From the NCBI GenBank assembly GCA_965240325.2, contig OZ251222.1:4216001-4280000 (forward strand): a stretch of DNA of 64,000 nt, written 5' to 3'. Positions 47,203 through 64,000 of this stretch are shown here, one piece after another (within the stretch, counting starts at the first letter, position 1; each line of letters opens with the position of its first letter). The translations under genes were made by a program, and so were the position numbers. Origin of the DNA: Rebecca billardiae RCC1528. Taxonomy: Eukaryota > Protista > Haptophyta. Under the pieces are notes generated by a model. It was not told the origin of the DNA, searched no databases, and saw only the letters and a program-made list of their open reading frames with translations.

Positions 47203-47203
47203 G

Positions 47204-50200
47204 TGGCGATGGTGGCGGCGAGGGCGGAGATGGCGGCGGGAAGGGCTCAGCACGGGGCGGCGGCGGCGGGGCCGGCGGCGGCGAGGGCGGCGGGCTCGGC
47301 GGCGGCGAGGGCGGCGGCGAGGGCGGCGGCGAGGGCGGCGGCGGCGAGGGCGGCGGGCTCGGCGGCGGCGAAGGCGGCGGCGAGGGCGGTGGCTGCGGCG
47401 GTGACGCCGGCGGCGAGGGCGGTGGGGGCGAGGGCGTGGGTGGTGGCGGCAGCGGCGGCGCCGAGGGCGGCTTCGGCGGGCCGGGCGGCGGGGACGGGCT
47501 GGCCGGTGGCGGGCTGGGCGGCGGCGATGGCGGTGGCGACGGCGGCGGTCCGGGGCTTGGCGGTGGGCTGGGAGGTGGGCTGGGAGGTGGTAGGGGTGGC
47601 GGCGACAGCGGTGGTGGCGGGCTGGGCGGCGGGCTGGGTGGCGGGCTGGGCGGCGGCTGGCTCGGTGGCGGCGACGGAGGCGGGCTCGGCGGCGGCAAAG
47701 GCGGTAGCGACGGCGGCGGCAGCGGCGGCGGCGACGGCGGCGGGGTCGGCGATGCCGGCGGCGGGCTCGGTGGCGGCCGAGGCAGCGGAGGCGGTGGGCT
47801 TGGCGGTGGCGACGGTGGCGGCAGTGGCGGCGGCGGCCGCGGCGGCGGGCTCGGCGGCGGCAATGGCGGCGGCGATGGCGGCTCGCTCGGCGGCGGTGGC
47901 GATGGCTGCGGCGGCGGTGGCGGCGGGAAAGGCACTACACGCGGTGGCGGCGGCGGCGCTGGCGGTGGTGACGGCGGTGGCGACGGCGGCGGCGATGGCG
48001 GCGGTGCAGGCGGCGGCGAGGGCGGCGGCGAGGGCGGTGGGAGGGGCGGCGACGGTGGCGGGCTCGGCGGCGGCAGCGGCGGCGGCGGCGACGGTGCGGG
48101 CGGCGGCGGCGGTGGGAACGGGATCGTGCGCGGCGGCGGCGGCGGTGTTGGCGGTGGGGACGGCGGCGGCGACGGCGGTGGCGTCGGTGGGGACGGCGGA
48201 GGCGACGGCGGCGGGCTGGGTGGCGGCGAGGGCGGCGGCAGCGGCGGTGACGGTGGCGGGCTTGGCGGCGGCAGTGGCGGCGGCGGCGACGGTGCGGGCG
48301 GCGGCGGCGGTGGGAACGGGATCGTGCGCGGCGGCGGCGGCGGTGTTGGCGGTGGGGACGGCGGTGGCGACGGCGGCGGCGAGGGAGGCGGTGCCGGTGG
48401 CGTCGGCGGGCTTGGCGGCGGGCTCGGCGGTGGCGAAGGCGGCGGCGACGGTGGCAATGGCGGCGGGTATGGCTCGGCGCGCGGTGGCGGCGGCGGCAGC
48501 GGCGGCGGAGACGGCGGTGGGCTTGGCGGCGGCAAGGGGGGTGGCGTGGGCGGGGTCAATGGCGGCGGTGGGCTCGGCGGCGGCGAAGGCGGAGGAGACG
48601 GCGGCAAATGCGGCGGCGGCGAAGGAGGCGGCGAGGGTGGGGGGCTGGGCGGCGGCGATGGCGGAGGTGATGGCGGCGGGCGCGGGACGCCAGTCGGCGG
48701 CGGGGACGGCGGTGGGCTCGGCGGAGGCGACGGCGGCGGACTCGGCGGCGGGGACGGTGGCGGGCTCGGCGGAGGCGATGGCGGCAGCCGCGGCGGCGGC
48801 GACGGCGGCGGGCTTGGCGGTGGGCTGGGCGGCGGCGTGGGCGGAAGCGGGTTCGGCGGCGGGCTCGGCGGCGGCGACGGTGGCGGGCTCGGCGGTGGGG
48901 ACGGTGAGGGCAAGGGCGGTGGAGACGGCGGCGGCACGGGCGGCGGGCTCGGCGGTGGGCGCGGCGGCGGCGGGGACGGTGGCGGGCGCGGCGGTGGCGA
49001 CGGTGGCGGCACGGGCGGCGGGCTTGGCGGCGGCGCCGGAGGTGGGCTCGGCGGCGGCGAGGGCGGCGGAGCGGGTGGCAACGGCGGCGGGAACGGCTCA
49101 GCCCGTGGCGGCGGCGGCGGCAGGGGCGGTGGCGACGGAGGTGGGCTCGGCGGCGGCGAGGGCGGTGGCGAGGGCGGAGGTGTTGGCGGCGGCGGGCTCG
49201 GGGGCGGGCTCGGCGGTGGCGCCGGCGGCGCGCCCGGCGGCGGCGAGGGCGGCGGGCTCGGTGGCGGGCCTGGCGGCGGCGGGCTCGGCGGCGGGCTCGG
49301 CGGTGGGCTCGGCGGCGGGCTGGGCGGCGGGCTCGGCGGCGGGCTCGGCGGCGGGCTCGGCGGCGGACTGGGCGGCGACGAGGGCGGTGGCGAAGGTGGC
49401 GGGCTCGGCGCGTCCGCGGGTGGTGGGCTCGGCGGCGGGCTTGGCGGTGGGCTCGGCGGCGGGGATGGCGGCGGGCTGGGCGGCACCGACGGTGGCGGCG
49501 AGGGCGGCGGCAACGGCGGCGGAGGGCTCGGTGGCGGACTCGGCGGAGGGCTCGGTGGCGGCGAGGGCGGCGGCGAGGGCGGCGGCGAGGGCGGCGGGCT
49601 CGGAATGCCAGCAGGCGGCGGGCTCGGTGGCGGGCTCGGCGGAGGCGATGGCGGCGGGCTCGGCGGCGGCGACGGTGGCGGGCTCGGCGGAGGCGACGGC
49701 GGTGGGCTCGGCGGCGGCGACGGTGGCGGGCTCGGCGGAGGCGATGGCGGCGGCAAGGGCGGTGGAGACGGCGGCGGCACGGGCGGCGGGCTCGGCGGTG
49801 GGCGCGGCGGCGGTGGGGACGGTGGCGGGCTCGGCGGTGGCGACGGCGGCGGCACGGGCGGCGGGCTTGGCGGCGGCGCCGGAGGTGGGCTCGGCGGCGG
49901 CGAGGGCGGCGGAGCGGGTGGCAACGGCGGCGGGAACGGCTCAGCCCGTGGCGGCGGCGGCGGCAGGGGCGGTGGCGACGGAGGTGGGCTCGGCGGCGGC
50001 GAGGGCGGTGGCGAGGGCGGAGGTGTTGGCGGCGGCGGGCTCGGGGGCGGGCTCGGCGGTGGCGCCGGCGGCGCGCCCGGCGGCGGCGAGGGCGGCGGGC
50101 TCGGTGGCGGGCCTGGCGGCGGCGGGCTCGGCGGCGGGCTCGGCGGTGGGCTCGGCGGCGGGCTGGGCGGCGGGCTCGGCGGCGGGCTCGGCGGCGGGCT

Positions 50201-53200
50201 CGGCGGCGGATTGGGCGGCGACGAGGGCGGTGGCGAAGGTGGCGGGCTCGGCGCGTCCGCGGGTGGTGGGCTCGGCGGCGGGCTTGGCGGTGGGCTCGGC
50301 GGCGGGGATGGCGGCGGGCTGGGCGGCACCGACGGTGGCGGCGAGGGCGGCGGCAACGGCGGCGGAGGGCTCGGTGGCGGACTCGGCGGAGGGCTCGGTG
50401 GCGGCGAGGGCGGCGGCGAGGGCGGCGGCGAGGGCGGCGGGCTCGGAATGCCAGCAGGCGGCGGGCTCGGTGGCGGGCTCGGCGGAGGCGATGGCGGCGG
50501 GCTCGGCGGCGGCGACGGTGGCGGGCTCGGCGGAGGCGACGGCGGTGGGCTCGGCGGCGGCGACGGTGGCGGGCTCGGCGGAGGCGATGGCGGCGGCAAG
50601 GGCGGTGGAGACGGCGGCGGCACGGGCGGCGGGCTCGGCGGTGGGCGCGGCGGCGGTGGGGACGGTGGCGGGCTCGGCGGTGGCGACGGCGGCGGCACGG
50701 GCGGCGGGCTTGGCGGCGGCGCCGGAGGTGGGCTCGGCGGCGGCGAGGGCGGCGGAGCGGGTGGCGACGGCGGCGGGAACGGCTCAGCCCGTGGCGGCGG
50801 CGGCGGCAGGGGCGGTGGCGACGGAGGTGGGCTCGGCGGCGGCGAGGGCGGTGGCGAGGGCGGAGGTGTTGGCGGCGGCGGGCTCGGGGGCGGGCTCGGC
50901 GGTGGCGCCGGCGGCGCGCCCGGCGGCGGCGAGGGCGGCGGGCTCGGTGGCGGGCCTGGCGGCGGCGGGCTCGGCGGCGGGCTCGGCGGTGGGCTCGGCG
51001 GCGGGCTGGGCGGCGGGCTCGGCGGCGGGCTCGGCGGCGGGCTCGGCGGCGGGCTGGGCGGCGACGAGGGCGGTGGCGAAGGTGGCGGGCTCGGCGCGTC
51101 CGCGGGTGGTGGGCTCGGCGGCGGGCTTGGCGGTGGGCTCGGCGGCGGGGATGGCGGCGGGCTGGGCGGCACCGACGGTGGCGGCGAGGGCGGCGGCAAC
51201 GGCGGCGGAGGGCTCGGTGGCGGACTCGGCGGAGGGCTCGGTGGCGGCGAGGGCGGCGGCGAGGGCGGCGGCGAGGGCGGCGGGCTCAGAATGCCAGCAG
51301 GCGGCGGGCTCGGTGGCGGGCTCGGCGGAGGCGATGGCGGCGGGCTCGGCGGCGGCGACGGTGGCGGGCTCGGCGGAGGCGACGGCGGTGGGCTCGGCGG
51401 CGGCGACGGTGGCGGGCTCGGCGGAGGCGATGGCGGCGGCAAGGGCGGTGGAGACGGCGGCGGCACGGGCGGCGGGCTCGGCGGTGGGCGCGGCGGCGGT
51501 GGGGACGGTGGCGGGCTCGGCGGTGACGACGGCGGCGGCACGGGCGGCGGGCTTGGCGGCGGCGCCGGAGGTGGGCTCGGCGGCGGCGAGGGCGGCGGAG
51601 CGGGTGGCGACGGCGGCGGGAACGGCTCAGCCCGTGGCGGCGGCGGCGGCAGGGGCGGTGGCGACGGAGGTGGGCTCGGCGGCGGCGAGGGCGGTGGCGA
51701 GGGCGGAGGTGTTGGCGGCGGCGGGCTCGGGGGCGGGCTCGGCGGTGGCGCCGGCGGCGCGCCCGGCGGCGGCGAGGGCGGCGGGCTCGGTGGCGGGCCT
51801 GGCGGCGGCGGGCTCGGCGGCGGGCTCGGCGGTGGGTTCGGCGGCGGGCTGGGCGGCAAGCTCGGCGGCGGGCTCGGCGGCGGGCTCGGCGGCGGACTGG
51901 GCGGCGACGAGGGCGGTGGCGAAGGTGGCGGGCTCGGCGCGTCCGCGGGTGGTGGGCTCGGCGGCGGGCTTGGCGGTGGGCTCGGCGGCGGGGATGGCGG
52001 CGGGCTGGGCGGCACCGACGGTGGCGGCGAGGGCGGCGGCAACGGCGGCGGAGGGCTCGGTGGCGGACTCGGCGGAGGGCTCGGTGGCGGCGAGGGCGGC
52101 GGCGAGGGCGGCGGCGAGGGCGGCGCGCTCGGAATGCCAGCAGGCGGCGGGCTCGGTGGCGGGCTCGGCGGAGGCGATGGCGGCGGGCTCGGCGGCGGCG
52201 ACGGTGGCGGGCTCGGCGGAGGCGACGGCGGTGGGCTCGGCGGCGGCGACGGTGGCGGGCTCGGCGGAGGCGATGGCGGCGGCAAGGGCGGTGGAGACGG
52301 CGGCGGCACGGGCGGCGGGCTCGGCGGTGGGCGCGGCGGCGGTGGGGACGGTGGCGGGCTCGGCGGTGGCGACGGCGGCGGCACGGGCGGCGGGCTTGGC
52401 GGCGGCGCCGGAGGTGGGCTCGGCGGCGGCGAGGGCGGCGGAGCGGGTGGCGACGGCGGCGGGAACGGCTCAGCCCGTGGCGGCGGCGGCGGCAGGGGCG
52501 GTGGCGACGGAGGTGGGCTCGGCGGCGGCGAGGGCGGTGGCGAGGGCGGAGGTGTTGGCGGCGGCGGGCTCGGGGGCGGGCTCGGCGGTGGCGCCGGCGG
52601 CGCGCCCGGCGGCGGCGAGGGCGGCGGGCTCGGTGGCGGGCCTGGCGGCGGCGGGCTCGGCGGCGGGCTCGGCGGTGGGCTCGGCGGCGGGCTGGGCGGC
52701 GGGCTCGGCGGCGGGCTCGGCGGCGGGCTCGGCGGCGGACTGGGCGGCGACGAGGGCGGTGGCGAAGGTGGCGGGCTCGGCGCGTCCGCGGGTGGTGGGC
52801 TCGGCGGCGGGCTTGGCGGTGGGCTCGGCGGCGGGGATGGCGGCGGGCTGGGCGGCACCGACGGTGGCGGCGAGGGCGGCGGCAACGGCGGCGGAGGGCT
52901 CGGTGGCGGACTCGGCGGAGGGCTCGGTGGCGGCGAGGGCGGCGGCGAGGGCGGCGGCGAGGGCGGCGGGCTCGGAATGCCAGCAGGCGGCGGGCTCGGT
53001 GGCGGGCTCGGCGGAGGCGATGGCGGCGGGCTCGGCGGCGGCGACGGTGGCGGGCTCGGCGGAGGCGACGGCGGTGGGCTCGGCGGCGGCGACGGTGGCG
53101 GGCTCGGCGGAGGCGATGGCGGCGGCAAGGGCGGTGGAGACGGCGGCGGCACGGGCGGCGGGCTCGGCGGTGGGCGCGGCGGCGGTGGGGACGGTGGCGG

Positions 53201-56200
53201 GCTCGGCGGTGGCGACGGCGGCGGCACGGGCGGCGGGCTTGGCGGCGGCGCCGGAGGTGGGCTCGGCGGCGGCGAGGGCGGCGGAGCGGGTGGCGACGGC
53301 GGCGGGAACGGCTCAGCCCGTGGCGGCGGCGGCGGCAGGGGCGGTGGCGACGGAGGTGGGCTCGGCGGCGGCGAAGGCGGTGGCGAGGGCGGAGGTGTTG
53401 GCGGCGGCGGGCTCGGGGGCGGGCTCGGCGGTGGCGCCGGCGGCGCGCCCGGCGGCGGCGAGGGCGGCGGGCTCGGTGGCGGGCCTGGCGGCGGCGGGCT
53501 CGGCGGCGGGCTCGGCGGTGGGCTCGGCGGCGGGCTGGGCGGCGGGCTCGGCGGCGGGCTCGGCGGCGGGCTCGGCGGCGGACTGGGCGGCGACGAGGGC
53601 GGTGGCGAAGGTGGCGGGCTCGGCGCGTCCGCGGGTGGTGGGCTCGGCGGCGGGCTTGGCGGTGGGCTCGGCGGCGGGGATGGCGGCGGGCTGGGCGGCA
53701 CCGACGGTGGCGGCGAGGGCGGCGGCAACGGCGGCGGAGGGCTCGGCGGCGGACTCGGCGGAGGGCTCGGTGGCGGCGAGGGCGGGGGTGATGGCGGCGG
53801 GCTCGGAGCGCCGGCCGGTGGCGGTGACGGTGGCGGGCTCGGCGGAGGCGACGGTGGCGGCATGGGTGGCGGGCTTGGTGGTGGCGATGGAGGCGGCACG
53901 GGCGGCGGCGGCGAGGGTGGCGGGCTCGGCGGTGGTGATGGCGGCGGCACGGGGGGCGGGTTGGGCGGAGGCGACGGCGGAGGGCTCGGTGGCGGTGATG
54001 GCGGCGGCTCTGGCGGCGAAGGCGGCGGGAACGGCTCCGCCCGAGGCGGAGGCGGTGGCGCGGGCGGCGGCGAGGGCGGTGGGCTTGGCGGTGGCGAGGG
54101 TGGCGGCGAGGGCGGCGGGGACGGCGGCGGCGGCGACGGCGGCGGTGCGGGCGGTGGTGACGGCGGCGGCACAGGTGGCGGCTGTGGCGGCGGGCTCGGC
54201 GGCGGCTGCGGCGCGCTGGGTGGCGGCGACGGCGGCGGCGACGGCGGCGGCGACGGGGGCGGCAGAGGCGGCGGCGACGGGGGCGGCAGAGGCGGGCTCG
54301 GCGGTGGGCTCGGCGGCGGGCTCGGCGGCGGCGATGGCGGTGGCGCAGGCGGCGGCGCTGGCGGCGGCGAGGGCGGCGGTGCTGGCGGCGGCGAGGGCGG
54401 CTGACCCGGGGGTGGGCTCGGAGGTGGGTTGGGCGGTGGCGAGGGCGGCGGGCTCGGGACGCCCGCCGGCGGTGGGCTCGGCGGTGGGCTCGGCGGTGGC
54501 GACGGCGGTGGCGCTGGCGGCAGGGACGGCGGTGGGCTCGGCGGCGGCGACGGTGGCGGGCCCGGCGGCGGCGACGGCGGTGGCGACGGGGGCGGCGGGG
54601 ACGGTGGCGGGCTTGGTGGCGGCAATGGAGGCGGCACCGGCGGCGAACGCGGCGGCGGCGACGGTGGTGGCGACGGCGGCGGGCTCGGTGGCGGCGCCGG
54701 CGGCGCCGGCGGCGGGAAGGGCAATGCGCGCGGAGGCGGCGGCGGCAGGGGCGGCGACGACGGAGGCGGGCTCGGCGGCGGCGAGGGTGGCGGTGAGGGC
54801 GGTGGTGTGGGCGGCGGCGGGCTCGGCGGCGGGCTCGGCGGCGGCGCCGGCGGCGCGCTCGGCGGCGGCGAGGGCGGCGGGCTCGGTGGCGGGCTCGGCG
54901 GTGGCGGGCTCGGCGGCGGTGACGGCGGGGGGCTTGGCGGCGGGCGCGGCGCGGCGGGTGGCGGCGACGGAGGTGGGCTTGGCGGTGGCGAGGGTGGCGG
55001 GGATGGCGGCGGCGACGGCGGAGCGGACGGTGGCGGCGACGGCGGCGGCAATGGCGGGGGCGAAGGCGGGGGCGAAGGTGGCAGGCTTGGCGGCGGCGAG
55101 GGCGGCGGGCCGGGCGAGCCTGTGGGTGGAGGGCTGGGCGGGGGGCTGGGCGGCGGCACGGGTGGCGGAGACGGTGGCACCGCCGGCGGTGGGCTCGGTG
55201 GTGGCGTCGGCGGCGGCGTCGGCGGCTGCGCCGGCGGCGGGCTCGGCGGCGGGCTCGGCGGCGGCGCTGGCGGCGGAGGGCTCGGTGGCGGCGACGGTGG
55301 AGGCGCCGGGGGCGATGATGGCGGCGGCGACGGCGGTGGCCGCGGCGGCGGGCTCGGCGGCGGGCTCGGCGGCGGCGAGGGTGGCAGCGACGGCGGCGGC
55401 GACGGCGGAGGCACGGGCAGCGGCGGAGGCGGGCTCGGCGGTGGCGACGGCGGCGGCGCGGGCGGCGGGCTCGGCGGCGGCAAAGGCGGACGCGACGGTG
55501 GGGGCGGCGACGGAGGCGGCGCGGGCGGCGGTGAGGGCGGCGGCGACGGCGGCGGCGACGGCGGCGGCGATGGTGGCGGGCTCGGCGGCGGGCTCGGGGG
55601 CGGCGCGGGCGGCGACGGCGGCGGGAAGGGCAATGCGCGCGGAGGCGGCGGCGGCAGGGGCGGCGGCGACGGAGGCGGGCTCGGCGGCGGCGATGGCGGC
55701 GGCGACGGTGGCGGCGCCGGCGGCGGCGGCGAGGGCGGCGGCGAGGGCGGCGGCAATGGCGGCGGCGACGGCGGTGGCGAAGGCGGTGGGCTCGGCGGCG
55801 GCTGCGGCGATCGGGGCGGCGGGGACGGCGGAGGCGACGGCGGTGGTGAGGGCGGTGGAGACGGCGGCGGTGAGGGTGGCGGCAGCGGTGGGCTCGGCGG
55901 CGGCGAGGGCGGCGGCGAGGGCGGCGGGCTCGGTGGCGGTTGCGGTGGCGTCGACGGCGGCGGCGACGGCGGCGGATGCGGTGGTGGCGACGGCGGAAGG
56001 CTTGGCGGTGGCGACGGCGGCGGCGACGGCGGTGGTGAGGGCGGTGGGCTCGGAGGCGGCTGCGGCGATCGGGGCGGCGGGGACGGCGGAGGCGACGGCG
56101 GTGGTGAGGGCGGTGGAGACGGCGGCGGTGATGGTGGCGGCAGCGGTGGGCTTGGCGGTGGCGATGGTGGCGGCGCCGGCGGCGGGCTCGGCGGCGGGCT

Positions 56201-59200
56201 CGGCGGCGGGCTCGGCGGCACGCTTGGCGGTGGGCTCGGAGGTGGCGCTGGCGGCTGCAGCGGCGGCGGGCTCGGGGGCGGCAGAGGTGGCGGCAGAGGC
56301 GGTGGTGGGCTCGGCGGCGGCGAAGGCGGTGGTGAGGGCGGCGGCGACGGCGGTGGGCTCGGCGGTGCCGCCGGCGGCGGCGAAGGTGGCGGCGAGGGCG
56401 GCGGCGAGGGTGGCGGTGAGGGTGGCGGCGAGGGCGGTGGCAGGGGCGGCGGAGGCGAGGGTGGTGGCGAAGGCGGCGGGCTCGGCGGCGGCGCTGGCGG
56501 CGGCGATGGCGGCGGCACCGGCGGCAGCGCGGGCGGCGGGCTCGGCGGCGGCGAGGGCGGTGGGCTCGGCGGCGGGCTCGGCGGCGGGCTCGGCGGCGAC
56601 GGTGGCGGGAATGGCTGGGTGCGAGGCGGGGGCGGCGGGAGCGGCGGCGGCGAGGGCGGCGGGGACGGCGGCGGCGAGGGCGGTGGGCTCGGTGGGGGCG
56701 ACGGTGGTGGGCTCGGCGGCGGCGAGGGCGGCGGGGACGGCGGCGGTGACGGTGGCGGGCTCGGCGGCGGCGAGGGCGGCGGCAAGGGCGGCGGCGAGGG
56801 CGGCGGTGGCGAGGGCGGCGGGCTCGGCGGCGGCGAGGGCGGCGGCGAAGGCGGCGGCTGCGGCGGCGACGCCGGCGGCGAGGGCGGTGGGGGCGAGGGC
56901 GTGGGTGGTGGCGGCAGCGGCGGCGCCGAGGGCGGCTTGGGCGGGCCGGGCGGCGGGAACGGGCTGGCGGGCGGCGGGCTGGGCGGCGGCGATGGTGGCG
57001 GCGAGGGCGGCGGTTCGGGGTGCGGCGGCGGGCTGGGCGGCGGGCTCGGCGGCGGGCTGGGCGGCCGCGGCTGCGGCGGCGGTGGGCTCGGTGGCGGCAA
57101 GGGCGGCGGGCTCGGCGGCGGGCTCGGCGGCGGGCTCGGGGGCGGCGACGGCGGCGGCGACGGCGGTGGGCTCGGCGGTGGGCCAGGCGGCGGCGACGGC
57201 GGCGGCGACGGCGGTGGGCTCGGCGGCGGGCTCGGCGGCGGGCTCGGCGGCGGCGACGGCGGTGGGCTCGGCGGTGGCGGCAGCGGCGGCGGGCTCGGCG
57301 GCGGCGACGGCGGCGGTGCCGGCGGTGGGACAGGCGGCGGCGGCGACGGCTGGGGTGGCGGCGGCGGCGGGAACGGGATCGTGCGCGGTGGTGGCGGCGG
57401 GTTCGGCGGCGGGCTCGGCGGCGGCGACGGCGGCGGCATCGGCGGCGGCGATGGCGGCGACGAAGGCGGCGGCGATGGCGGCGGCGAGGGCGGCGGCGAG
57501 GGCGGCGGCGTGGGCGGTGGCGAAGGCGGCGGCGTGGGCGGCGACGGCGGCGGGCTTGGCGGCGGCAGCGGTGGTGGCGGCGACGGCTGGGGTGGCGGCG
57601 GCGGCGGGAACGGGATCGTGCGCGGTGGTGGCGGCGGTGCTGGCGGCGGCGACGGTGGCGGCGACGGCGGTGGCGTCGGCGGCGACGGCGGCGGCGACGG
57701 CGGCGGGCTCGGCGGCGGCGACGGCGGCGGCAGCGGTGGCGACGGCGGCGGGCTCGGCGGCGGCAGCGGCGGGGGTGGCGAGGGTGCCGGTGGCGGCGGC
57801 GGCGGGAATGGGATCGTGCGCGGCGGCGGAGGCGGTGCGGGCGGCGGCGACGGTGGCGGCGCCGGCGGCGGCGAGGGCGGCGGCGGCGAGGGCGGCGGTG
57901 CGGGCGGCGACGGGCTCGGCGGCAGGCCCGGCGGCGGCGACGGCGGTGGCGACGGCGGAGGCATCGGCGGCGGCGAGGGCGGTGGCGAGGGGGGCGGCGA
58001 GGGGGGCGGCGAGGGCGGTGGTGAGGGCGGCGGCGAGGGCGGCGGGCTCGGCGGCGGCGACGGCGGCGGCGACGGCGGCGACGGCGGCGGGAACGGCTCC
58101 GCGCGCGGCGGCGGCGGCGGCAGCGGCGGCGGCGAGGGCGGCGGGCTCGGTGGCGGCGAGGGCGGCGGCGACGGCGGAGGCGTGGGCGGTGGCGGCGAGG
58201 GCGGCGGCGCGGGCGGCGGCGGCGAGGGCGGCGCAGACGGCGGCGGCGAGGGCGGCGGGCTCGGCGGCGGGCTCGGCGGCGGGCTCGGGTTGCCGACTGG
58301 CGGCGGGCTCGGCGGCGGGCTCGGCGGCGGCGACGGCGGCGGCGACGGCGGCGGCGCCGGCGGCGCGCTCGGCGGCGGGCGCGGCGGCGGGCGCGGCGGC
58401 GGGCGCGGCGGCGGGCTCGGCGGCGGAGACGGAGGTGGCGGGGACGGCGGCGGAGAAGGCGGCGGGGACGGCGGCGGGGACGGCGGCGGGGACGGCGGCG
58501 GGCTCGGCGGCGGGCTCGGCGGCGGCGAGGGCGGCGGGCCCGGAGCGCCGGCCGGCGGCGGGCTCGGCGGCGGCGAGGGCGGCGGCAAGGGCGGCGGGCT
58601 CGGCGGCGGGCGCGGCGGCGCGCGCGGCGGCGGGCTCGGCGGCGGCGCCGGCGGCGGCGGGCTGGGCGGCGGGCTCGGCGGCGGCGACGGCGGCGGGCTC
58701 GGCGGCGGCGTCGGCGGCGGTGCCGGCGGCGGCGACGGCGGCGGCGCCGGCGGTGGGCTCGGCGGCGGGCTGGGCGGCGGCGCCGGTGGCGGGCTCGGCG
58801 GCGCGCCGGGCGGCGGGCTCGGCGGCGGGCTCGGCGGCGGCGCGGGCGGCGCGGCCGGCGGCGGCGAGGGCGGCGGGCTGGGCGGCGGGCTGGGCGGCGG
58901 GCTGGGCGGCGGGCTGGGCGGCGGCGCGGGCGGCGGCGGCAGCGGCGGCCCCGCCACCGTCGCGCTGAGCAGCGGCTCGAACGTGAAGGCGAAGCCGTCA
59001 TAGAAGGCGGCGGACGAGCCGAGGAACGGGAAGTTGCGCTCGTCGCCGCCGACGCCGAGCGCGTCCGTCGTCTCGACCATCACGGCGACGCCGAACGCGC
59101 CGCTCAGCGCGGGCCAGCCGCCGCTCGGGTACACGCCGAGCGTGAAGACGCCGTCCGCGTAGCTCGCGCGCCCCACCCAGTAGCCCTGCGTCGAGGTGCC

Positions 59201-62200
59201 GTTGTCGGTGCCGTTCACGTACACGGGCGTGTACGACGCGGCGTCCATCTCGACCTCGAACAGCACCGCCGTCTGCGAGTCGTCGGCGGTGGCGCCGTCG
59301 TCGCTCGTCACGACGACCGAGACGACGAGCGGCTCGGTGCTGCCCAGCACCGGCGCGCTCGTGATGTTGTAGCTCGCGAGGAAGCGGTACTTCCCCGCGA
59401 CGGCGCGCAGCAGGTACTGCACGTCCTGCGCGCTCGGCGTGCCGTCGAGCGTCGGGTCGAGCGCGGACGCGCACGCGCTCACGTCCGAGCCGACGACGAG
59501 CTGCGCGAGGACGCGCACGTCGAACGAGGTGAAGGCGCAGTCGCCGTTCACGTCGCCCACCACCGCCGCGTCGCACCCCGCGCACGAGGACAGCCGGCGC
59601 CGCGCGCCGCGCCGCTCCGCCGCGCGGCGCGCGCTCGCGCGGTGGGCGCGCGGCGCGCGCGCGGCCTCGAGCTCGAGCAGCGCGCGCCGCCGCCGGCTGA
59701 CGGTGGTGGTGAGCCCGCCCACGCCCGCGAAGATGGGCACGTCGGTGACGCGCGTCTCGGTCTCGCCCAGCAGCGTGACGAGCTCGACGACCGTGCCGCT
59801 CAGCTCCGTGCTCGCCGCGCCGAGCACGTCGAAGAGGACCGTGCCCACGTTTGCCAGCTGGCCGCTCGTCGTGAGCGAGTCGGTGTTGCCCGCGATCCGC
59901 ACGGTCTCGAGCGGGTCGTTGATCGTGCACACGGCCCAGGAGAGCGTGGTGCACGAGGCCGCGCGGAGGACGGACGAGTCGAGCGCGATCTCGATCTGGA
60001 AGTTCACCAGGTACTCCGAGACGCCGCCCGTGTTGACGAGGACGTCGACGCTCACGCCGCTGCCCGACTGCACGAGCTGCAGCCCGCTGCTCGAGCCGAG
60101 GTCGACGTCGTACTGCGCGGGGCGCAGGTTGGCGGTGACGTCGAGCGTGTCCGAGACGGCGCCCGCGTCGCGCGAGGTGGCGGTGATCACGTTCGCGCCG
60201 TTGCGGCTGTTCCCCGCGATCGTGAGCACGCCGTCAGCGCCCACGCGCACCACGGCCGGGTCGTCCGAGCCCCAGTCCAGCAGCTGCGCCGAAGGCACGT
60301 ACGACAGCGAGAGCAGGTCGGCGTAGGCCACGCCGTCCGCGAGCGTGGCCGCGGCGGCCAGCGAGACGGAGGTGCCGTTGATCCCGTTGAGCAACGCGCC
60401 GGACGTCGAGCCGTACAGGCTGAGCGTGAGCGACGTGAGCTGCACCGGCATGTCGCTCACGAGCGCGAGCGCGGACGCAGAGGTCGAGCCCCACGTGGCG
60501 GTGATGAGCGCCGCGCCCGCCCCGACGCCGACGACGGTCGCCCCGCTGAGCGTCGCGACGGACGTGTCGTTCGAGGCGATGCTCATGTACGGGCCGAGGC
60601 CCGAGACGGCGGTGCCGTCGGTCAGCGCGGCGCTGGTCGTGGTGCCCGAGCGCTGGAACGCTGAGGACGCGCCGATCCGTCCGAGCTCCGCGTCCGCGAG
60701 CGTGATCGCCATGGCCGTGGCGTACAGCACGCGCACCTCCGCCCAGCCGCTCAAGCCGAAGGAGGGCACGGCGGCGCTCACGTTGAACGCGGCGCAGCTC
60801 GCGCCGGACGCGACGCTGATCGTCGCGCTCGGCGCGTCGAGCGTGGCGCAGTCGGTCGACGTGCCGCCGAGCGTGAGGTTGGTGCGCGCGTCTGCGCTGA
60901 AGTCCGCCTCCGAGCCGTCCGCAAAGTGGACCGTGACGGTGGCGGTGGTCGAGGTGGGAAGCGAGACGGGCGCGCCCGCGGCGGAGTCGCCCGGCGCGGC
61001 GAGGCGCGCGGTGGCGGTGCTCACGACGAGCGAGGTCGCGGCGGGCAGCGCGATCTCCACGCGCGCGCGCCCGGTCGCCAGCGTGCTGTTGCATGAGTCC
61101 CTCCACACCGCCTCGAGCAGCTCGCCCGCGGCCGAGCTCGCGCCCGTGGCGACGGTGGCGCTCCACGGCGCGTCGGCCGAGGCGGGCGCGCTCACGGTGA
61201 GGCTCGGCGTCCGGCTGCTGAGCGTGAGCGCGTCGGACGGGACGCGCTCCACCGAGCCATCGCCGAGGTACGCGTACGCGTACACGCTCAGCGCCTGCCC
61301 CTCGGCGCTCAGCGCCTGCGAGAGCTGCACGGCCGCGTCGAACGCGGCGCTGGACGCGCCGAGCTCCGTCGGCGGCTGCGCGACAAACGACGCGGCGCTG
61401 AACGCGACCGGCCGCAGCGAGGCGACGAGGCGCTGCACCGCGGTGGAGACGACGACGCTTGCGCGCACGCTGCCGCGCGCGCTTGACACGACCACCTCCG
61501 TCGAGCCCACGCCCACGCCGCTCACCGTCGCCACGCCGGTCGTGGCCGACTGGCTGACGCTCGCGACCGCCGCGTCCGCGCTCGCGAGCGCGGTGCGCGC
61601 GGTCACGTCCACGCCGCTCACCGTGCCCAGCCCCTCGCCGCCGAACGCGGCGACGACGCTCGCCGTGCCCGACTGAAAGGCCTGCGCGCCGCACGCGCCC
61701 GGCTGCGACGCGCCCTTGATTGCGTACAGCGTGCCTCGCTCCAGCACGAGCTCGGCGGACAGCGGGTACCACACGCGCAGCGGCACGCTCGCCACGACGG
61801 CGCCGCTCGACTCGTCGGTCACGTTCACGAGCGTCCCCGCCGCGCCGGCCGTGTGCGACGCGCCCGCGACGAGCGTGCACGGCGAGCCCGTCTCGACCGC
61901 GAGCACCGCCGCGTCGAGCGCCGCGCAGCCGTACCCTTGGGTCGCGTACGCCGACGCGGTGGCCGCCCTCGAGTAGAGCTCGAGCACGGAGAGCGCGGCG
62001 CTCGCGTTGGCGCCGCCGAGCGGGGCGTCGTTGAGCAGCTCGCCCGCGTCCACCCACGCTTGCACCGCGCCGACGGAGACCGCCTCGACGCCGAGCGTGC
62101 CCGTCGCGGCCGCGCCGTCGTCCGCGCCCGCCACCACGCCCGCGCTGTCTGAGAGGTACGCGTTGCTCGCAGCGTTCACGTACTGCACGACGCGGCACGA

Positions 62201-63298
62201 GAGCGCGGCCGCGTGCGAGCCGGGCGGCGCGTCCGCGCGCACGGCGAGCGTGAGCGTGATGAGCGGCACCGCGGCGCCCGTCACGTCCGCCTCGGACGTG
62301 CCGCCCGTCAGCCCGGACGCCACGACGCCGAGCGTGCCCACGCCGTCGTCGTTGAGCGTGGGCGAGTTGTACGTGCTCGCCACCGCGCTCGCGCTCACGC
62401 CCAGCAGGCTCGCGTTGTACGACAGCTCGACCTGCCACGTGCTGAGCGCCGCGCCGCCCGTGTGCGCGTACAGCACGAGCTCGAACGAGTCGCCCGCGAA
62501 GATGGGCGACTTGGCCATCTGCGCGAGCAGCCCGACGGAGGGCAGCGTGTACGCCGTCGGCGCCTTGGCAAGCGTGATCGCGCCCGCGGCCTCGCACGAG
62601 CCCGCGTTGCCGCCGCCGTCGTACGAGAAGTCGACGCGCGCGCTGAGCGTGCGCGCGGCGCTGTCGCTGAACCACGCGGCGTCGAGCGTCGCGCTGCACT
62701 CGCCCACGCCGCTGCTCGAGCCGGGCATCCCGCACGAGGACTGCGCGCTCTCCGAGCCGCCGTCGAGCGAGAGTGTGAGCAACACGCCCAGCCCGCTGCT
62801 CGTCACCTGCGAGCGCTGCGCCTCGTCGCGCATCTGGTAGTTGACGCGCGCGTCGAGGCGGTCGACGTACAGCACGGCGGTGCGCGGCACGCAGCTCACG
62901 CTCGCCGCCTGCTGCGCGACCAGCGTGAAGCCGGCGCTCGCCACGCCCAGGTCGATGCCGTGCGACGACGCGCGGACCGTGCCCGCGTCGCCCTTGGTCG
63001 CGCCCGCAAAGAAGCCCACGCTCACGTTGTGGAAGCTGCCCGCGCTGCTCGCCGAGCCGTGCAGCGGCAGGCCTGGGCTGCCCGCCGCCGGGTAGAGCGT
63101 CAGCAGCGCGCCCTCGACCAGGTCGGCCGCGTCGAAGGCGAACGGCGGCAGCGGCGGCGAGGGCGGCGAGGGCGGCGGGTGCGGCAGCGTGCGCGGCGGC
63201 GGCGGGCTCGGCGGCGACGGCGGCGGGGCCGGCGGCGGCGGGCTCGGCGGCGGCGACGGTGGCGGCGACGGCGGCGGCGACGGCGGCGGCTGCGGGAA

Positions 63299-63329
<31 letters not shown>

Positions 63330-64000
63330 GGCGGCGGGCTCGGCGGCGGGCTCGGCGGCGGGCGCGGCGGCGGGCTGGGCGGTGGAAGCGGCGGCGGCGG
63401 TGCCGGCGGTGGGGATGGCGGCGGCGAGGGCGGCGGGCTGGGCGGCGGCGAGGGCGGCGGCGAGGGTGGCGGGAACGGAGGCGGCGGCGAGGGCGGCGGC
63501 GAGGGCGGCGGCGAGGGCGGCAGCGTGGGAGGCGGGCTCGGCGGCGGGTGTGGTGGTGGCGGCGCCGGCGGTGGCGACGGTGGCGGCGATGGAGGCGGGC
63601 TGGGCGGCGGCGAGGGCGGCGGCGAGGGCGGCGGCGCGGGTGGCGGCGGCGAGGGCGGCGGCGAGGGCGGCGGCGAGGGCGGCGGCGAGGGCGGCGGCGA
63701 CGGCGGCGGCGGCGAGGGCGGCGGCGAGGGCGGTGGCGAGGGCGGCGGCGCAGGCGGCGGCGCAGGCGGCGGTGACGGCGGCGGCGACGGCGGCGGGCTC
63801 GGCGGAGGCGACGGCGGAGGGCTCGGCGGTGGCGGGCTTGGCGGCGGCGAGGGTGGTGGCGAGGGCGGCGGCGAGGGCGGCGGGCTCGGTGGGGGCGGGC
63901 TCGGCGGCGGAGCCGGTGGTGGCGAGGGCGGCGCCGCCGGCGGTGGCGACGGTGGCGGGCGTGGCGGCGGCGACGGCGGCGGGCTCGGAGGCGGCGACGG
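47204..64000 (-). CDS. Giant SPPP-rich (extensin/HRGP-like) extracellular protein with TMEM132-like/cohesin/dockerin module A; upstream segment, 5'-partial
   Basis: Corresponds to ORF 46373..63025(-). The frame continues upstream of the called GTG (…SPPLPPFAFDAADLVEGALLTLYPAAGSPGLPLHGSASSAGSFHNVSVGFF…) and through SPPP repeats to the right edge. Contains a normal-looking globular domain with strong GC3 codon bias. The Pro-rich reading ends at a 1-nt indel at 47201-47203. Confidence 0.9.
48860..53800. repeat. Near-identical coding tandem array, ~6 x 843 bp (281 aa)
   Basis: Anchor gaacggctcagcccgt at 49091, 49934, 50777, 51620, 52463, 53306; the translated units (…AGIP…ADAP…GAPP…RAEPF…) differ at only a few residues. 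Confidence 0.92.
59393..59557 (-). other. Dockerin-like domain, module A
   Basis: GDVNGDCAFTSFDVRVLAQLVVG…LDPTLDGTPSAQDVQYLLRAVAG: two Dx[N/T]xDx6D loops, each followed by an amphipathic helix, as in dockerin type I. Confidence 0.7.
59725..60113 (-). other. Cohesin-like domain 2, module A
   Basis: GSGVSVDVLVNTGGVSEYLVNFQIEIALDSSVLRAASC…TVRIAG…VGTVLFDV. Confidence 0.55.
61052..62900 (-). other. TMEM132-like ectodomain core, module A
   Basis: Motifs recalled from TMEM132 proteins occur in order: SC…GECSATLDAAWFS, a cohesin-like domain, LRVWYPL…TLYAIKG…C…FQS…VDVT, L…EGQ…YAYLGDGSV…LTLSS, and GELLEA…C…TLATG. Confidence 0.6.
62130..62540 (-). other. Cohesin-like domain 1, module A
   Basis: PIFAGDSFELVLYAHTGGAALSTWQVELSYNASLLGV…LGVVASG…PLITLTLAV matches the cohesin pattern (GdtftV.v…i.g.q..l.YD..lL…l.tltF.v). 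Confidence 0.6.

What the first reader, a model, noticed from the sequence alone, without database searches (positions are those of the whole stretch)
59393..60113. Cohesin-like / cleavable linker / dockerin-like cassette within a giant HRGP: candidate eukaryotic self-assembling cellulosome-style scaffold
Seen: in both modules a cohesin-like domain is followed by a 30-40 aa Arg-rich linker and then a dockerin-like double Ca-binding motif (also at 22012-22743); each module has a second cohesin-like domain further upstream. Established: cohesin-dockerin pairs are the high-affinity, Ca-dependent connectors of bacterial cellulosomes. Inference: cleavage at the linker would release subunits of the form [dockerin-domain X-micrometre SPPP rod-TMEM132-like/cohesin/Ig/cohesin], with a dockerin at one end and two cohesins at the other. 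Such subunits could polymerise head-to-tail or branch into a Ca-dependent extracellular mesh, coat or filament. No catalytic domain is visible, so the role looks structural or adhesive. I know of no described algal HRGP that uses cohesin-dockerin links.
Basis: partly seen in the sequence, partly recalled or inferred. Interest (0 to 1): 0.92.

Follow-up and report, generated by a model that had tools for sequence, protein, structure and literature searches.

The report
Cohesin, cleavable spacer, dockerin cassette
A giant proline-rich surface protein, probably from a haptophyte alga, carries a bacterial-type cohesin followed by its likely dockerin partner, joined by a spacer with conserved protease-type sites, so the protein may be cut into micrometre-long pieces held together by calcium-dependent clips.

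Summary
On the minus strand, 59393-60118 encodes three parts.
- A cohesin: the fold matches solved cohesins at Z 11-13.
- A 37-residue Arg-rich spacer.
- A type-I-like dockerin with two intact 12-residue Ca loops. The family profile hits solved dockerins at E 5e-10.

A 62% identical copy lies at 22000-22767. Each copy ends a conserved unit of about 1400 aa: a TMEM132-like ectodomain with an upstream cohesin, then cohesin, spacer, dockerin and an unknown beta-sandwich (X). The units sit between (S/A)PPP rods; the rod between them is 11,053 aa.

The family is large, with 319 representatives at E<=0.001. Named members are haptophytes (Diacronema, Prymnesium) and green algae (Cymbomonas, Mesostigma), and unnamed members carry cadherin repeats. 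The window is probably pavlovophyte, not a green alga.

Dibasic sites flank the spacer family-wide. AlphaFold gives pTM 0.90 for the cassette and 0.86 without X, so the cohesin and dockerin are predicted to pack together.

My reading: a convertase excises the spacer, and each junction stays clipped by its own cohesin-dockerin pair. Cleavage, Ca dependence, binding and expression are untested. It is not a cellulosome, since no enzymes are present.

First-stage notes flag the same cassette elsewhere in this genome; I did not check them.

The parts
58958..63142 (-). Module B, 1395 aa: TMEM132-like ectodomain followed by the cohesin-spacer-dockerin-X cassette
   Evidence: Continuous frame with SPPP rod on both sides. 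GC3 is 0.98. Homologous end to end with family members.
62087..62575 (-). Upstream cohesin-like domain (Coh1) of module B
   Evidence: Profile A8 against cassette cohesin profile A4: hhalign 98.2%, E 3.4e-14. Pfam Cohesin hits 4 of 35 family members. The only two PDB sequence hits are cohesins, both weak (E 0.3 and 0.4).
61763..62059 (-). Ig_TMEM132_4th domain of module B
   Evidence: Pfam PF16070 scores 28.4 bits against a cut-off of 27. It is found in 33 of 35 family members, best 2.3e-24.
59696..60118 (-). Cohesin domain (Coh2) of module B, cassette residues 7-147
   Evidence: AF2 pLDDT 93-98. VIA-align Z 13.3 to 2jh2_B and Z 11-13 to type I cohesins at rmsd 2.5-3.0 A over about 125 residues; 27 of the top 28 hits are cohesins.
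59585..59695 (-). Arg-rich spacer, cassette residues 148-184, with basic sites RRRR (59684-59695) and RRR-L (59594-59602)
   Evidence: pLDDT falls to 54-78 here. Dibasic sites are position-locked at both ends across the family.
59393..59584 (-). Dockerin, cassette residues 185-248; Ca loops at 59519-59554 and 59423-59458; four Cys
   Evidence: Helices 204-214 and 236-246 each follow a 12-residue D1/N-or-T3/D5/D12 loop. Pfam Dockerin_1 scores 21.4 bits. Family profile against PDB dockerins: 5.2e-10.
58958..59392 (-). Domain X: beta-sandwich of no known family, leading straight into the rod
   Evidence: pLDDT 92-98, all-beta. No Pfam, PDB sequence or Atlas match of weight.
21565..25800 (-). Module A, 1412 aa, same architecture as B
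   Evidence: 53% aa identity to B overall and 62% over the cassette. Pfam hits: Ig_TMEM132_4th, Ig_TMEM132_6th and Dockerin_1.
22000..22767 (-). Cassette A: cohesin (22321-22767), spacer (about 22216-22320), dockerin (22000-22215)
   Evidence: Pfam Cohesin 18.6 bits covering profile positions 9-128 of 139, and Dockerin_1 20.4 bits. Sub-ranges taken from alignment A2.
25801..58957 (-). (S/A)PPP rod between modules, 11,053 aa, with a 1-nt frame switch near 47205
   Evidence: 72% Pro, 17.5% Ser, 0-1 Tyr, 0 Cys. Frame switch located.
1..21564 (-). Rod after module A, at least 7,188 aa, running off the window
63143..64000 (-). Rod before module B, running off the window

Best explanation
Region 59393-60118 (minus strand) encodes a real cohesin, a disordered Arg-rich spacer bounded by two dibasic sites, and a real type-I-like Ca-loop dockerin. 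An unknown beta-sandwich, X, follows. This cassette closes a conserved extracellular unit of about 1400 aa, whose first 1000 aa form a TMEM132-like ectodomain with its own cohesin. The unit recurs along a giant (S/A)PPP-rod protein of a probable pavlovophyte haptophyte.

Proposed working:
1. The dockerin's partner is the cohesin directly before it.
2. In the secretory pathway a kexin/furin-type convertase cuts at both basic sites and removes the spacer, as the C-peptide is removed from proinsulin.
3. The covalent polyprotein becomes a chain of subunits, each of the form dockerin-X-rod-TMEM132-like-cohesin.
4. Each junction is then held non-covalently by a Ca-dependent cohesin-dockerin clip, comparable to SEA, GAIN or Notch S1 junctions.
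5. The result is a micrometre-scale extracellular fibre or coat with strong joints that could release.

Status of each step:
- Shown here: the domain identities, their order, conservation of the basic sites, and family breadth.
- Inferred: cohesin-dockerin contact, from pTM only.
- Not shown: cleavage, Ca dependence, extracellular location, expression.
For: - Cohesin fold: Z 11-13.3 to solved cohesins over model residues 7-147, with Foldseek probability 1.00 to cohesins.
- Dockerin: the family profile hits C. thermocellum dockerins at full length, E 5e-10 to 4e-9. Ca-loop residues D195, D206 and D238 are invariant in 63 cassettes.
- Pfam at family level: Cohesin in 27/63 and Dockerin_1 in 18/63.
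- Packing: AF2 gives pLDDT 92.7 and pTM 0.90 for the whole cassette. The cohesin-spacer-dockerin piece alone gives pLDDT 90.2 and pTM 0.86. The cohesin is only 59% of that chain, so a freely moving dockerin would not allow such a pTM.
- First basic site: 56/63 spacers have a dibasic site at a fixed distance after the cohesin (median 8, IQR 7-9).
- Second basic site: 48/63 have one within 22 residues of the dockerin.
- Dibasic density: 6.0 per 100 aa in spacers against 0.33 in folded parts.
- Furin-type motif: R-x-[KR]-R occurs in 25/63 spacers but only once in 22,638 folded residues.
- Spacer middle: variable in length (33-76 aa for the measured segment) and in sequence.
- One unit: the upstream 1000 aa and the cassette always occur together, often two or three times per protein.
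- Coding frame: GC3 is 0.98, and the frame is continuous with SPPP at all four module-rod junctions.
Against: - No coordinates or PAE were available. Cohesin-dockerin contact rests on pTM alone, and the geometry could not be compared with known complexes.
- AF2 would give the same packing if the real pairing were in trans.
- Module A's second site is degenerate: an RR lies 8 residues upstream, with a single R at the usual place.
- The window's own cohesin copies fall below Pfam cut-offs.
- No expression evidence was obtained.
- NG86 dN/dS between modules A and B is about 0.95. GC3 of 98% makes dS unreliable.
- A 1-nt frame switch at about 47205 may be an assembly error or a real break.
Confidence: 0.5

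Rival explanations
1. After cleavage the subunits separate and re-associate in trans. The dockerin of one subunit binds Coh2 or Coh1 of another, giving head-to-tail polymers or a branched Ca-dependent mesh.
For: Each module has two cohesins and one dockerin, so one cohesin is always spare. The same dibasic-site evidence applies. AF2 packing cannot tell cis from trans. Coh1 is homologous to Coh2.
Against: The spacer is never shorter than about 33 aa and the pair is always adjacent, which suits a pair that forms in cis as it is translated. Coh1 is only 19% identical to Coh2 in the hhalign alignment. In TMEM132 relatives Coh1 exists without any dockerin (PMC6030884). No free-standing dockerin-X or cohesin-terminal natural variants could be shown.
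Confidence: 0.2
2. There is no cleavage. Cohesin, dockerin and X form one permanent rigid supradomain that caps each TMEM132-like unit. The basic spacer is an exposed loop, for example one that binds acidic or sulphated polysaccharide of the cell covering.
For: High pTM suggests a compact unit. The spacer is 16% basic at the median and much higher in the window. Bacterial proteins with cohesin and dockerin on one chain are common.
Against: The basic residues are not spread along the spacer. They cluster at two position-locked sites flanking a variable middle, often as R-x-[KR]-R. That is the pattern of processing sites rather than a charge patch.
Confidence: 0.25
3. The locus is a decaying or mis-assembled repeat array, and the cassette is a relic with no present function.
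For: There is a frame switch at about 47205. dN/dS is about 0.95 between modules. Long open frames occur in all frames of this 80-85% GC DNA. No transcripts were found.
Against: All 7 invariant and 10 near-invariant family columns are kept in both modules. GC3 is 0.98 in the modules against GC2 of 0.58. Both modules are in frame with SPPP on both sides. The AF2 models are of high confidence.
Confidence: 0.05

Closest known systems
Type I cohesin-dockerin pairs of bacterial cellulosomes (e.g. C. thermocellum 1ohz/2ccl, C. acetobutylicum 6kgc)
   Same: Same two folds. The cohesin matches at Z 11-12. The dockerin aligns at full length with both Ca loops conserved.
   Different: Here both modules lie on one eukaryotic chain, adjacent to each other, and no enzymes are involved. 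The dockerin repeats are not symmetric. The dockerin carries 2-4 Cys, with Cys replacing the loop-1 Gly. A spacer flanked by dibasic sites lies between the two modules.
Non-cellulosomal cohesin/dockerin proteins (C. perfringens GH84C/GH33 cohesins 2jh2, 2w1n, 2vo8; Archaeoglobus cohesin 2xdh; bacterial proteins with both modules)
   Same: These are the best structural matches, at Z 12.8-13.3. Cohesin and dockerin on one polypeptide is common in bacteria.
   Different: None has the TMEM132-like ectodomain, the processing-type spacer, domain X or proline rods. In the AlphaFold DB models the two domains do not superpose as a unit (rmsd 15-25 A).
TMEM132 family and holozoan coherin/lefftyrin/hedgling cadherins (Sanchez-Pulido and Ponting 2017, PMC6030884)
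   Same: The upstream 1000 aa carries a cohesin followed by Ig_TMEM132_4th, 5th and 6th domains in the same order. Family members with cadherin repeats carry the whole unit, cassette included.
   Different: That paper reports no detectable dockerin in vertebrates. Here a second cohesin, a dockerin and X follow the TMEM132-like part. No transmembrane segment lies within the window. The unit is repeated on SPPP rods.
Processed non-covalent junctions (SEA, GAIN, Notch S1) and proinsulin C-peptide excision; from general knowledge
   Same: The proposed logic is the same: cut inside a folded or paired unit so that the halves stay associated. Two basic sites flank a variable excised peptide.
   Different: The folds differ. 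SEA and GAIN cleave themselves, whereas this would need a convertase. Nothing here has been shown experimentally.
Algal hydroxyproline-rich glycoproteins (volvocine SPPP-rod HRGPs, extensins); from general knowledge
   Same: Rods of (S/A)PPP units at 72% Pro, flanked by globular domains.
   Different: The rods are about 11,000 aa long and have no Tyr cross-link motifs (0-1 Tyr). The host is a haptophyte. The globular domains are of cohesin, dockerin and TMEM132 type.

Membership tests
Cohesin (PF00963) | Nine-stranded beta jelly-roll fold of cohesin modules | tested here: met
   Model residues 7-147: Z 13.3 (2jh2_B), 12.5 (4ums), 11.4 (1ohz_A), rmsd 2.5-3.0 A over about 125 residues.
Cohesin (PF00963) | Sequence match above Pfam's gathering score | tested here: inconclusive
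   In the window, copy A scores 18.6 bits (cut-off 24.1) and copy B has no hit. In the family, 27/63 hit at E<=0.01, best 1.5e-10. The family profile hits PDB cohesins at 4e-5 to 0.03.
Cohesin (PF00963) | Binds a dockerin | not testable with these tools
   Only indirect evidence: pTM 0.86 for cohesin-spacer-dockerin. No coordinates or PAE were returned.
Dockerin_1 (PF00404) | Two tandem segments, each a 12-residue EF-hand-like Ca loop followed by a helix | tested here: met
   Loop 195-206 with helix 204-214, and loop 227-238 with helix 236-246, pLDDT 94-98. D at loop positions 1, 5 and 12 in both loops.
Dockerin_1 (PF00404) | Sequence match to the family | tested here: met
   The window alone is just below cut-off: 21.4 and 20.4 bits against 22.9. 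The family profile hits 4fl4_A at 5.2e-10 and 2ccl_B at 8.2e-10; the hits up to E 1e-3 are dockerins or enzymes and scaffoldins of cellulosome-type systems, and EF-hand proteins appear only above E 1e-3.
Dockerin_1 (PF00404) | Ca2+-dependent folding and binding | not testable with these tools
   Needs ITC or SPR with and without EDTA.
Cellulosome / scaffoldin system | Scaffoldin cohesins recruit dockerin-bearing catalytic subunits | tested here: not met
   Pfam finds no catalytic domain in either module. Cohesin and dockerin lie on the same chain.
TMEM132-like ectodomain | Cohesin followed by Ig_TMEM132 4th, 5th and 6th domains in order | tested here: met
   PF16070 scores 28.4 bits (cut-off 27) and is found in 33/35 members. 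The 5th domain is found in 7 members and the 6th in 4. The upstream cohesin is supported.
TMEM132-like ectodomain | Single transmembrane helix and cytoplasmic tail after the ectodomain | tested here: inconclusive
   None within the window, and the gene runs off both ends. Some relatives have a C-terminal hydrophobic helix: P0014, P0018 and P0097.
Extensin-type HRGP | Ser-Pro(3-4) repeats | tested here: met
   85-91% of rod residues lie in X-PPP(P) units.
Extensin-type HRGP | Tyr-containing cross-link motifs | tested here: not met
   0-1 Tyr per rod segment of 3,900-7,200 aa.
Convertase-processed polyprotein | Conserved dibasic or R-x-[KR]-R sites in an exposed segment | tested here: met
   56/63 and 48/63 spacers have position-locked dibasic sites. 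R-x-[KR]-R is in 25/63 spacers against 1 in 22,638 folded residues. Spacer pLDDT is 54-78.
Convertase-processed polyprotein | Cleavage actually occurs | not testable with these tools
   Needs protein chemistry on native material.

The most novel reading that the evidence does not exclude
Eukaryotes have an undescribed, widespread assembly device. A cohesin and its own dockerin are encoded side by side, cut apart by a convertase, and left as a Ca-dependent non-covalent joint. The joint links micrometre-long glycoprotein rods into extracellular fibres. This device would be the ancestral context of the orphan cohesin of TMEM132 and coherin adhesion proteins, which lost the dockerin in vertebrates.
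Probability: 0.3. Interest if true: 0.85.

Novelty: new variant of a known kind. Interest (0 to 1): 0.7.

Why it matters
- Cohesin-dockerin pairs are among the strongest known protein connectors. So far they have mainly been studied in bacterial enzyme complexes.
- Here the pair is a fixed, conserved part of a large eukaryotic surface-protein family, with 319 representative clusters. The family includes cadherin-bearing relatives.
- The conserved processing-type spacer suggests a way to build very long extracellular structures from one gene.
- It gives a testable candidate for the missing partner of the TMEM132-type cohesin. The 2017 paper that defined that cohesin found no dockerin in vertebrates (PMC6030884).
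- It gives a molecular entry point to haptophyte cell coverings.
- It offers a new, disulphide-bearing eukaryotic cohesin-dockerin pair for protein engineering.

Tried and rejected
- Out-of-frame query: two references started at 60113, which is out of frame, and gave empty results. I repeated them in frame.
- Pfam on the window's copy-B cohesin and on both upstream cohesins: no hit. These were resolved only through family profiles and the fold.
- Domain X: profile against PDB sequences, Pfam over 61 members and Atlas features (best 0.72 to CBM96-type clusters, below the level worth trusting). No assignment.
- Expression:
  - The first run search listed none.
  - The second listed one coded run holding 6% of the words.
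  - Laying that run gave only four short contig pieces at 90-99% likeness. That is probably a paralogue or relative, and it shows nothing about transcription.
- dN/dS between modules is about 0.95 by Nei-Gojobori. I set it aside because GC3 is 98%, so synonymous change is confined to G/C.
- Natural split variants, meaning proteins that end at the cohesin or start at the dockerin: the candidates look like truncated gene models, so no conclusion.
- Swiss-Prot models: no TMEM132 among the top 30, only scaffoldins and generic beta-sandwich proteins.
- Papers: Peer et al. 2009 and Nichols et al. 2012 are not held. No held paper links dockerins to haptophytes or algal HRGPs.
- Cellulosome reading: rejected, because no enzymes are present.
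- Green-alga reading: set aside, because the closest named relatives are haptophytes.
Full report
**What is in the sequence**

The window is 75-86% GC with a constant G excess on the plus strand. The minus strand is effectively one open frame. Frame 0 is open over 46376-64000, and frame 1 over 1-47934. The two are joined by a single-base frame switch near 47205 inside the repeat.

Most of the frame encodes (S/A)PPP units: 72% Pro, 17.5% Ser, no Cys and almost no Tyr. Two globular modules interrupt the repeats. Module B lies at 58958-63142 (1395 aa) and module A at 21565-25800 (1412 aa).

Long ORFs exist in every frame of DNA this GC-rich, so ORF length proves nothing by itself. Three observations support the frame:
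- Codon-position GC in the modules is 0.67/0.58/0.98.
- Both modules are in frame with SPPP on both sides.
- Both modules are homologous end to end with proteins from other organisms.

The rod between the modules is 11,053 aa. That is about 3.4 um if it forms a polyproline-II helix at 0.31 nm per residue (the rise per residue is from general knowledge).

**The cassette**

The last 393 aa of module B read, in order:
- a beta-domain;
- SRRRR, then 27 variable residues, then RRR-L-SS;
- a Cys-bracketed segment with two 12-residue loops (DVNGDCAFTSFD and DPTLDGTPSAQD), each followed by a helix;
- a second beta-domain, here called X, which runs straight into the rod.

Module A has the same order and is 62% identical over this stretch.

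Pfam on the window's own copies falls just short of the curated cut-offs. Dockerin_1 scores 21.4 and 20.4 bits against 22.9. Cohesin scores 18.6 bits in A against 24.1, though it covers profile positions 9-128 of 139. Copy B gives no Cohesin hit.

**Family**

I searched a profile of the two cassettes against 1.84 billion representative proteins. It found 319 proteins at E<=0.001 and 171 at E<=1e-10. Among the best 150, 62 cassettes in 55 proteins are full length.

Named members:
- Diacronema lutheri KAG8459670 (about 50% identical over the cassette, two modules);
- Prymnesium parvum KAL1521827 (three modules);
- Pavlovales sp. CCMP2436;
- Cymbomonas tetramitiformis;
- Mesostigma viride.

The D. 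lutheri gene is 63-73% identical to the window's modules at the DNA level and lies in similarly GC-rich DNA. I therefore take the window to be from a pavlovophyte-like haptophyte. It could be a paralogue in that genome or a related species. This is an inference.

The upstream 1000 aa always travels with the cassette, so the whole 1400 aa is one conserved unit, often repeated within a protein. Some unnamed 5,800-6,100-aa members alternate this unit with cadherin repeats. That is the architecture PMC6030884 cites for holozoan coherin-type cadherins.

**Cohesin**

AlphaFold2 on a 63-sequence alignment gave mean pLDDT 92.7.
- Foldseek's best PDB matches are cohesins at probability 1.00.
- VIA-align places model residues 7-147 on cohesin modules at Z 11-13.3, with rmsd 2.5-3.0 A over about 125 of about 140 residues.
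- 27 of the top 28 entries are cohesins.
- The Atlas and AlphaFold DB searches agree.
- Pfam Cohesin is hit by 27 of the 63 cassettes, best 1.5e-10.

**Dockerin**

The 61-sequence profile of the segment hits solved dockerins at full length: 4fl4_A at 5.2e-10, 2ccl_B at 8.2e-10 and 1ohz_B at 3.6e-9. The hits up to E 1e-3 are dockerins or enzymes and scaffoldins of cellulosome-type systems, and generic EF-hand proteins appear only above E 1e-3.

The Asp residues at loop positions 1 and 12 of the first loop and position 12 of the second are invariant in all 63 cassettes. The model shows the expected loop-helix, loop-helix at pLDDT 94-98.

The family differs from bacterial dockerins in three ways:
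- Cys replaces Gly at position 6 of loop 1.
- The segment carries four Cys in 33 of 63 members and two in 18, which suggests disulphides.
- The two repeats are unlike each other, so a single binding mode is more likely than the bacterial dual mode. This last point is an inference.

**Upstream cohesin and TMEM132 likeness**

Ig_TMEM132_4th passes its cut-off in the window (28.4 bits against 27) and is found in 33 of 35 relatives. The 5th and 6th TMEM132 domains and Cohesin appear in some members. The profile of module residues about 190-352 matches the cassette cohesin profile at 98.2% probability, E 3.4e-14.

**The spacer**

The spacer is the only low-confidence part of the model, at pLDDT 54-78. 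Across the family:
- Its middle varies in length and sequence. The measured segment is 33-76 aa, median 51.
- Its ends carry position-locked basic sites.
  - 56 of 63 have a dibasic site at a median of 8 residues into the measured segment (IQR 7-9).
  - 48 of 63 have one within 22 residues of the dockerin's GD.
  - 43 of 63 have both.
- Dibasic density is 6.0 per 100 aa in the spacer against 0.33 in the folded parts.
- The furin-type motif R-x-[KR]-R occurs in 25 of 63 spacers but only once in 22,638 folded residues. In the cadherin-bearing members the sites are textbook examples such as RKRR and RTRR.

This is the pattern of a peptide excised at both ends. Cleavage itself has not been shown.

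**Do the cohesin and dockerin pair?**

No coordinates or PAE are returned by the tool, so I used pTM as a proxy.
- The full cassette has pTM 0.90.
- I then folded cohesin-spacer-dockerin without X. pLDDT was 90.2 and pTM 0.86.
- The cohesin is 59% of that chain and the spacer is poorly placed. A pTM of 0.86 therefore requires the dockerin to be placed confidently relative to the cohesin.

I read this as predicted contact between Coh2 and the dockerin. It cannot distinguish cis from trans, and I could not check the binding face.

**Mechanism**

My preferred reading has four steps:
1. The pair forms as the chain folds.
2. A convertase removes the spacer.
3. Each junction of the polyprotein becomes a non-covalent, probably Ca-dependent clip.
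4. The gene product is then a pre-assembled chain of subunits of the form dockerin-X-rod-TMEM132-like-cohesin.

A third possibility is an uncleaved rigid supradomain with a basic loop. The report gives odds for each.

**Comparison with what is known**

- It is not a cellulosome. There are no catalytic domains, and both connector modules lie on one chain.
- One-chain cohesin-plus-dockerin proteins are common in bacteria, so that feature is not new in itself.
- Within the literature I could search, three things are new:
  - the fixed eukaryotic arrangement of TMEM132-like ectodomain, cohesin, processing-type spacer, dockerin and X;
  - its repetition on micrometre-long proline rods;
  - its breadth across haptophytes, green algae and cadherin-bearing proteins.
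- PMC6030884 states that dockerin homologues are not detectable in vertebrates, which left the TMEM132 cohesin without a partner. This family supplies a candidate ancestral partner.
- I could not read Peer et al. 2009. From memory, it surveyed eukaryotic cohesin-like and dockerin-like sequences, so part of this may have been listed there.

**Caveats**

- No expression data were obtained.
- A frame switch at 47205 may be an assembly error.
- dN/dS is about 0.95 between the two modules, although GC3 of 98% makes it unreliable.
- Against decay, all 17 invariant or near-invariant family columns are kept in both modules.

**Earlier notes of this scan**

First-stage notes on this window and on other pieces of the same genome describe the same cassette, its basic linker and TMEM132-like modules. 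They are unchecked. I used them only as a pointer that the genome holds several such genes.

Noticed in passing
window 47150-47290 (minus strand): A single-base frame switch lies inside the SPPP repeat near 47205. Frame 0 reads on as Ala/Thr/Pro-rich sequence to a stop at 46376, while frame 1 continues as SPPP. It is either a homopolymer assembly error or a real break that would split the protein.
   Followed up: partly
window 49101-53312 and rods generally: The rod has higher-order repeats of 843 bp (281 aa). They are punctuated by a PPPPPRAEPF motif: 37 copies in the window's rods, with five spacings of exactly 281 aa.
   Followed up: partly
modules versus rods: Third-codon-position GC is 0.98 in the globular modules but 0.75 in the rods. 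The rods therefore use a more mixed set of Pro/Ser codons than the rest of the gene.
   Followed up: no
P0023, P0018 (also P0017, P0043, P0114): Unnamed proteins of 5,800-6,100 aa from large eukaryotic assemblies alternate cadherin repeats with the full TMEM132-like plus cohesin-dockerin-X unit. Their spacer sites are furin-type (RKRR, RTRR). They look like holozoan coherin-type cadherins that carry a dockerin.
   Followed up: partly
window 60097-60130 (cassette residues 3-14): The segment ANLxPxxxDVDLG at the start of the cassette cohesin holds three of the seven invariant residues of the whole cassette (N3, D10, D12). It may be a metal site or a contact site.
   Followed up: no
window 58958-59392 and 21565-22008: Domain X is the most conserved part between the two modules (70% identity). 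It is confidently predicted as a beta-sandwich but matches no Pfam or solved-structure family. The weak Atlas leads to CBM96/CBM9-type clusters are below a useful score.
   Followed up: partly
P0097 (Mesostigma viride), residues 1285-3000: This green-algal relative combines one module with filamin repeats, GEX2-like Ig domains and a C-terminal hydrophobic helix. The unit is therefore used in membrane-anchored proteins too.
   Followed up: no
L001 5004-7659: In the metagenomic contig of homologue P0002, the module is not followed by a proline rod. Unrelated ORFs in 53% GC DNA follow it instead.
   Followed up: no
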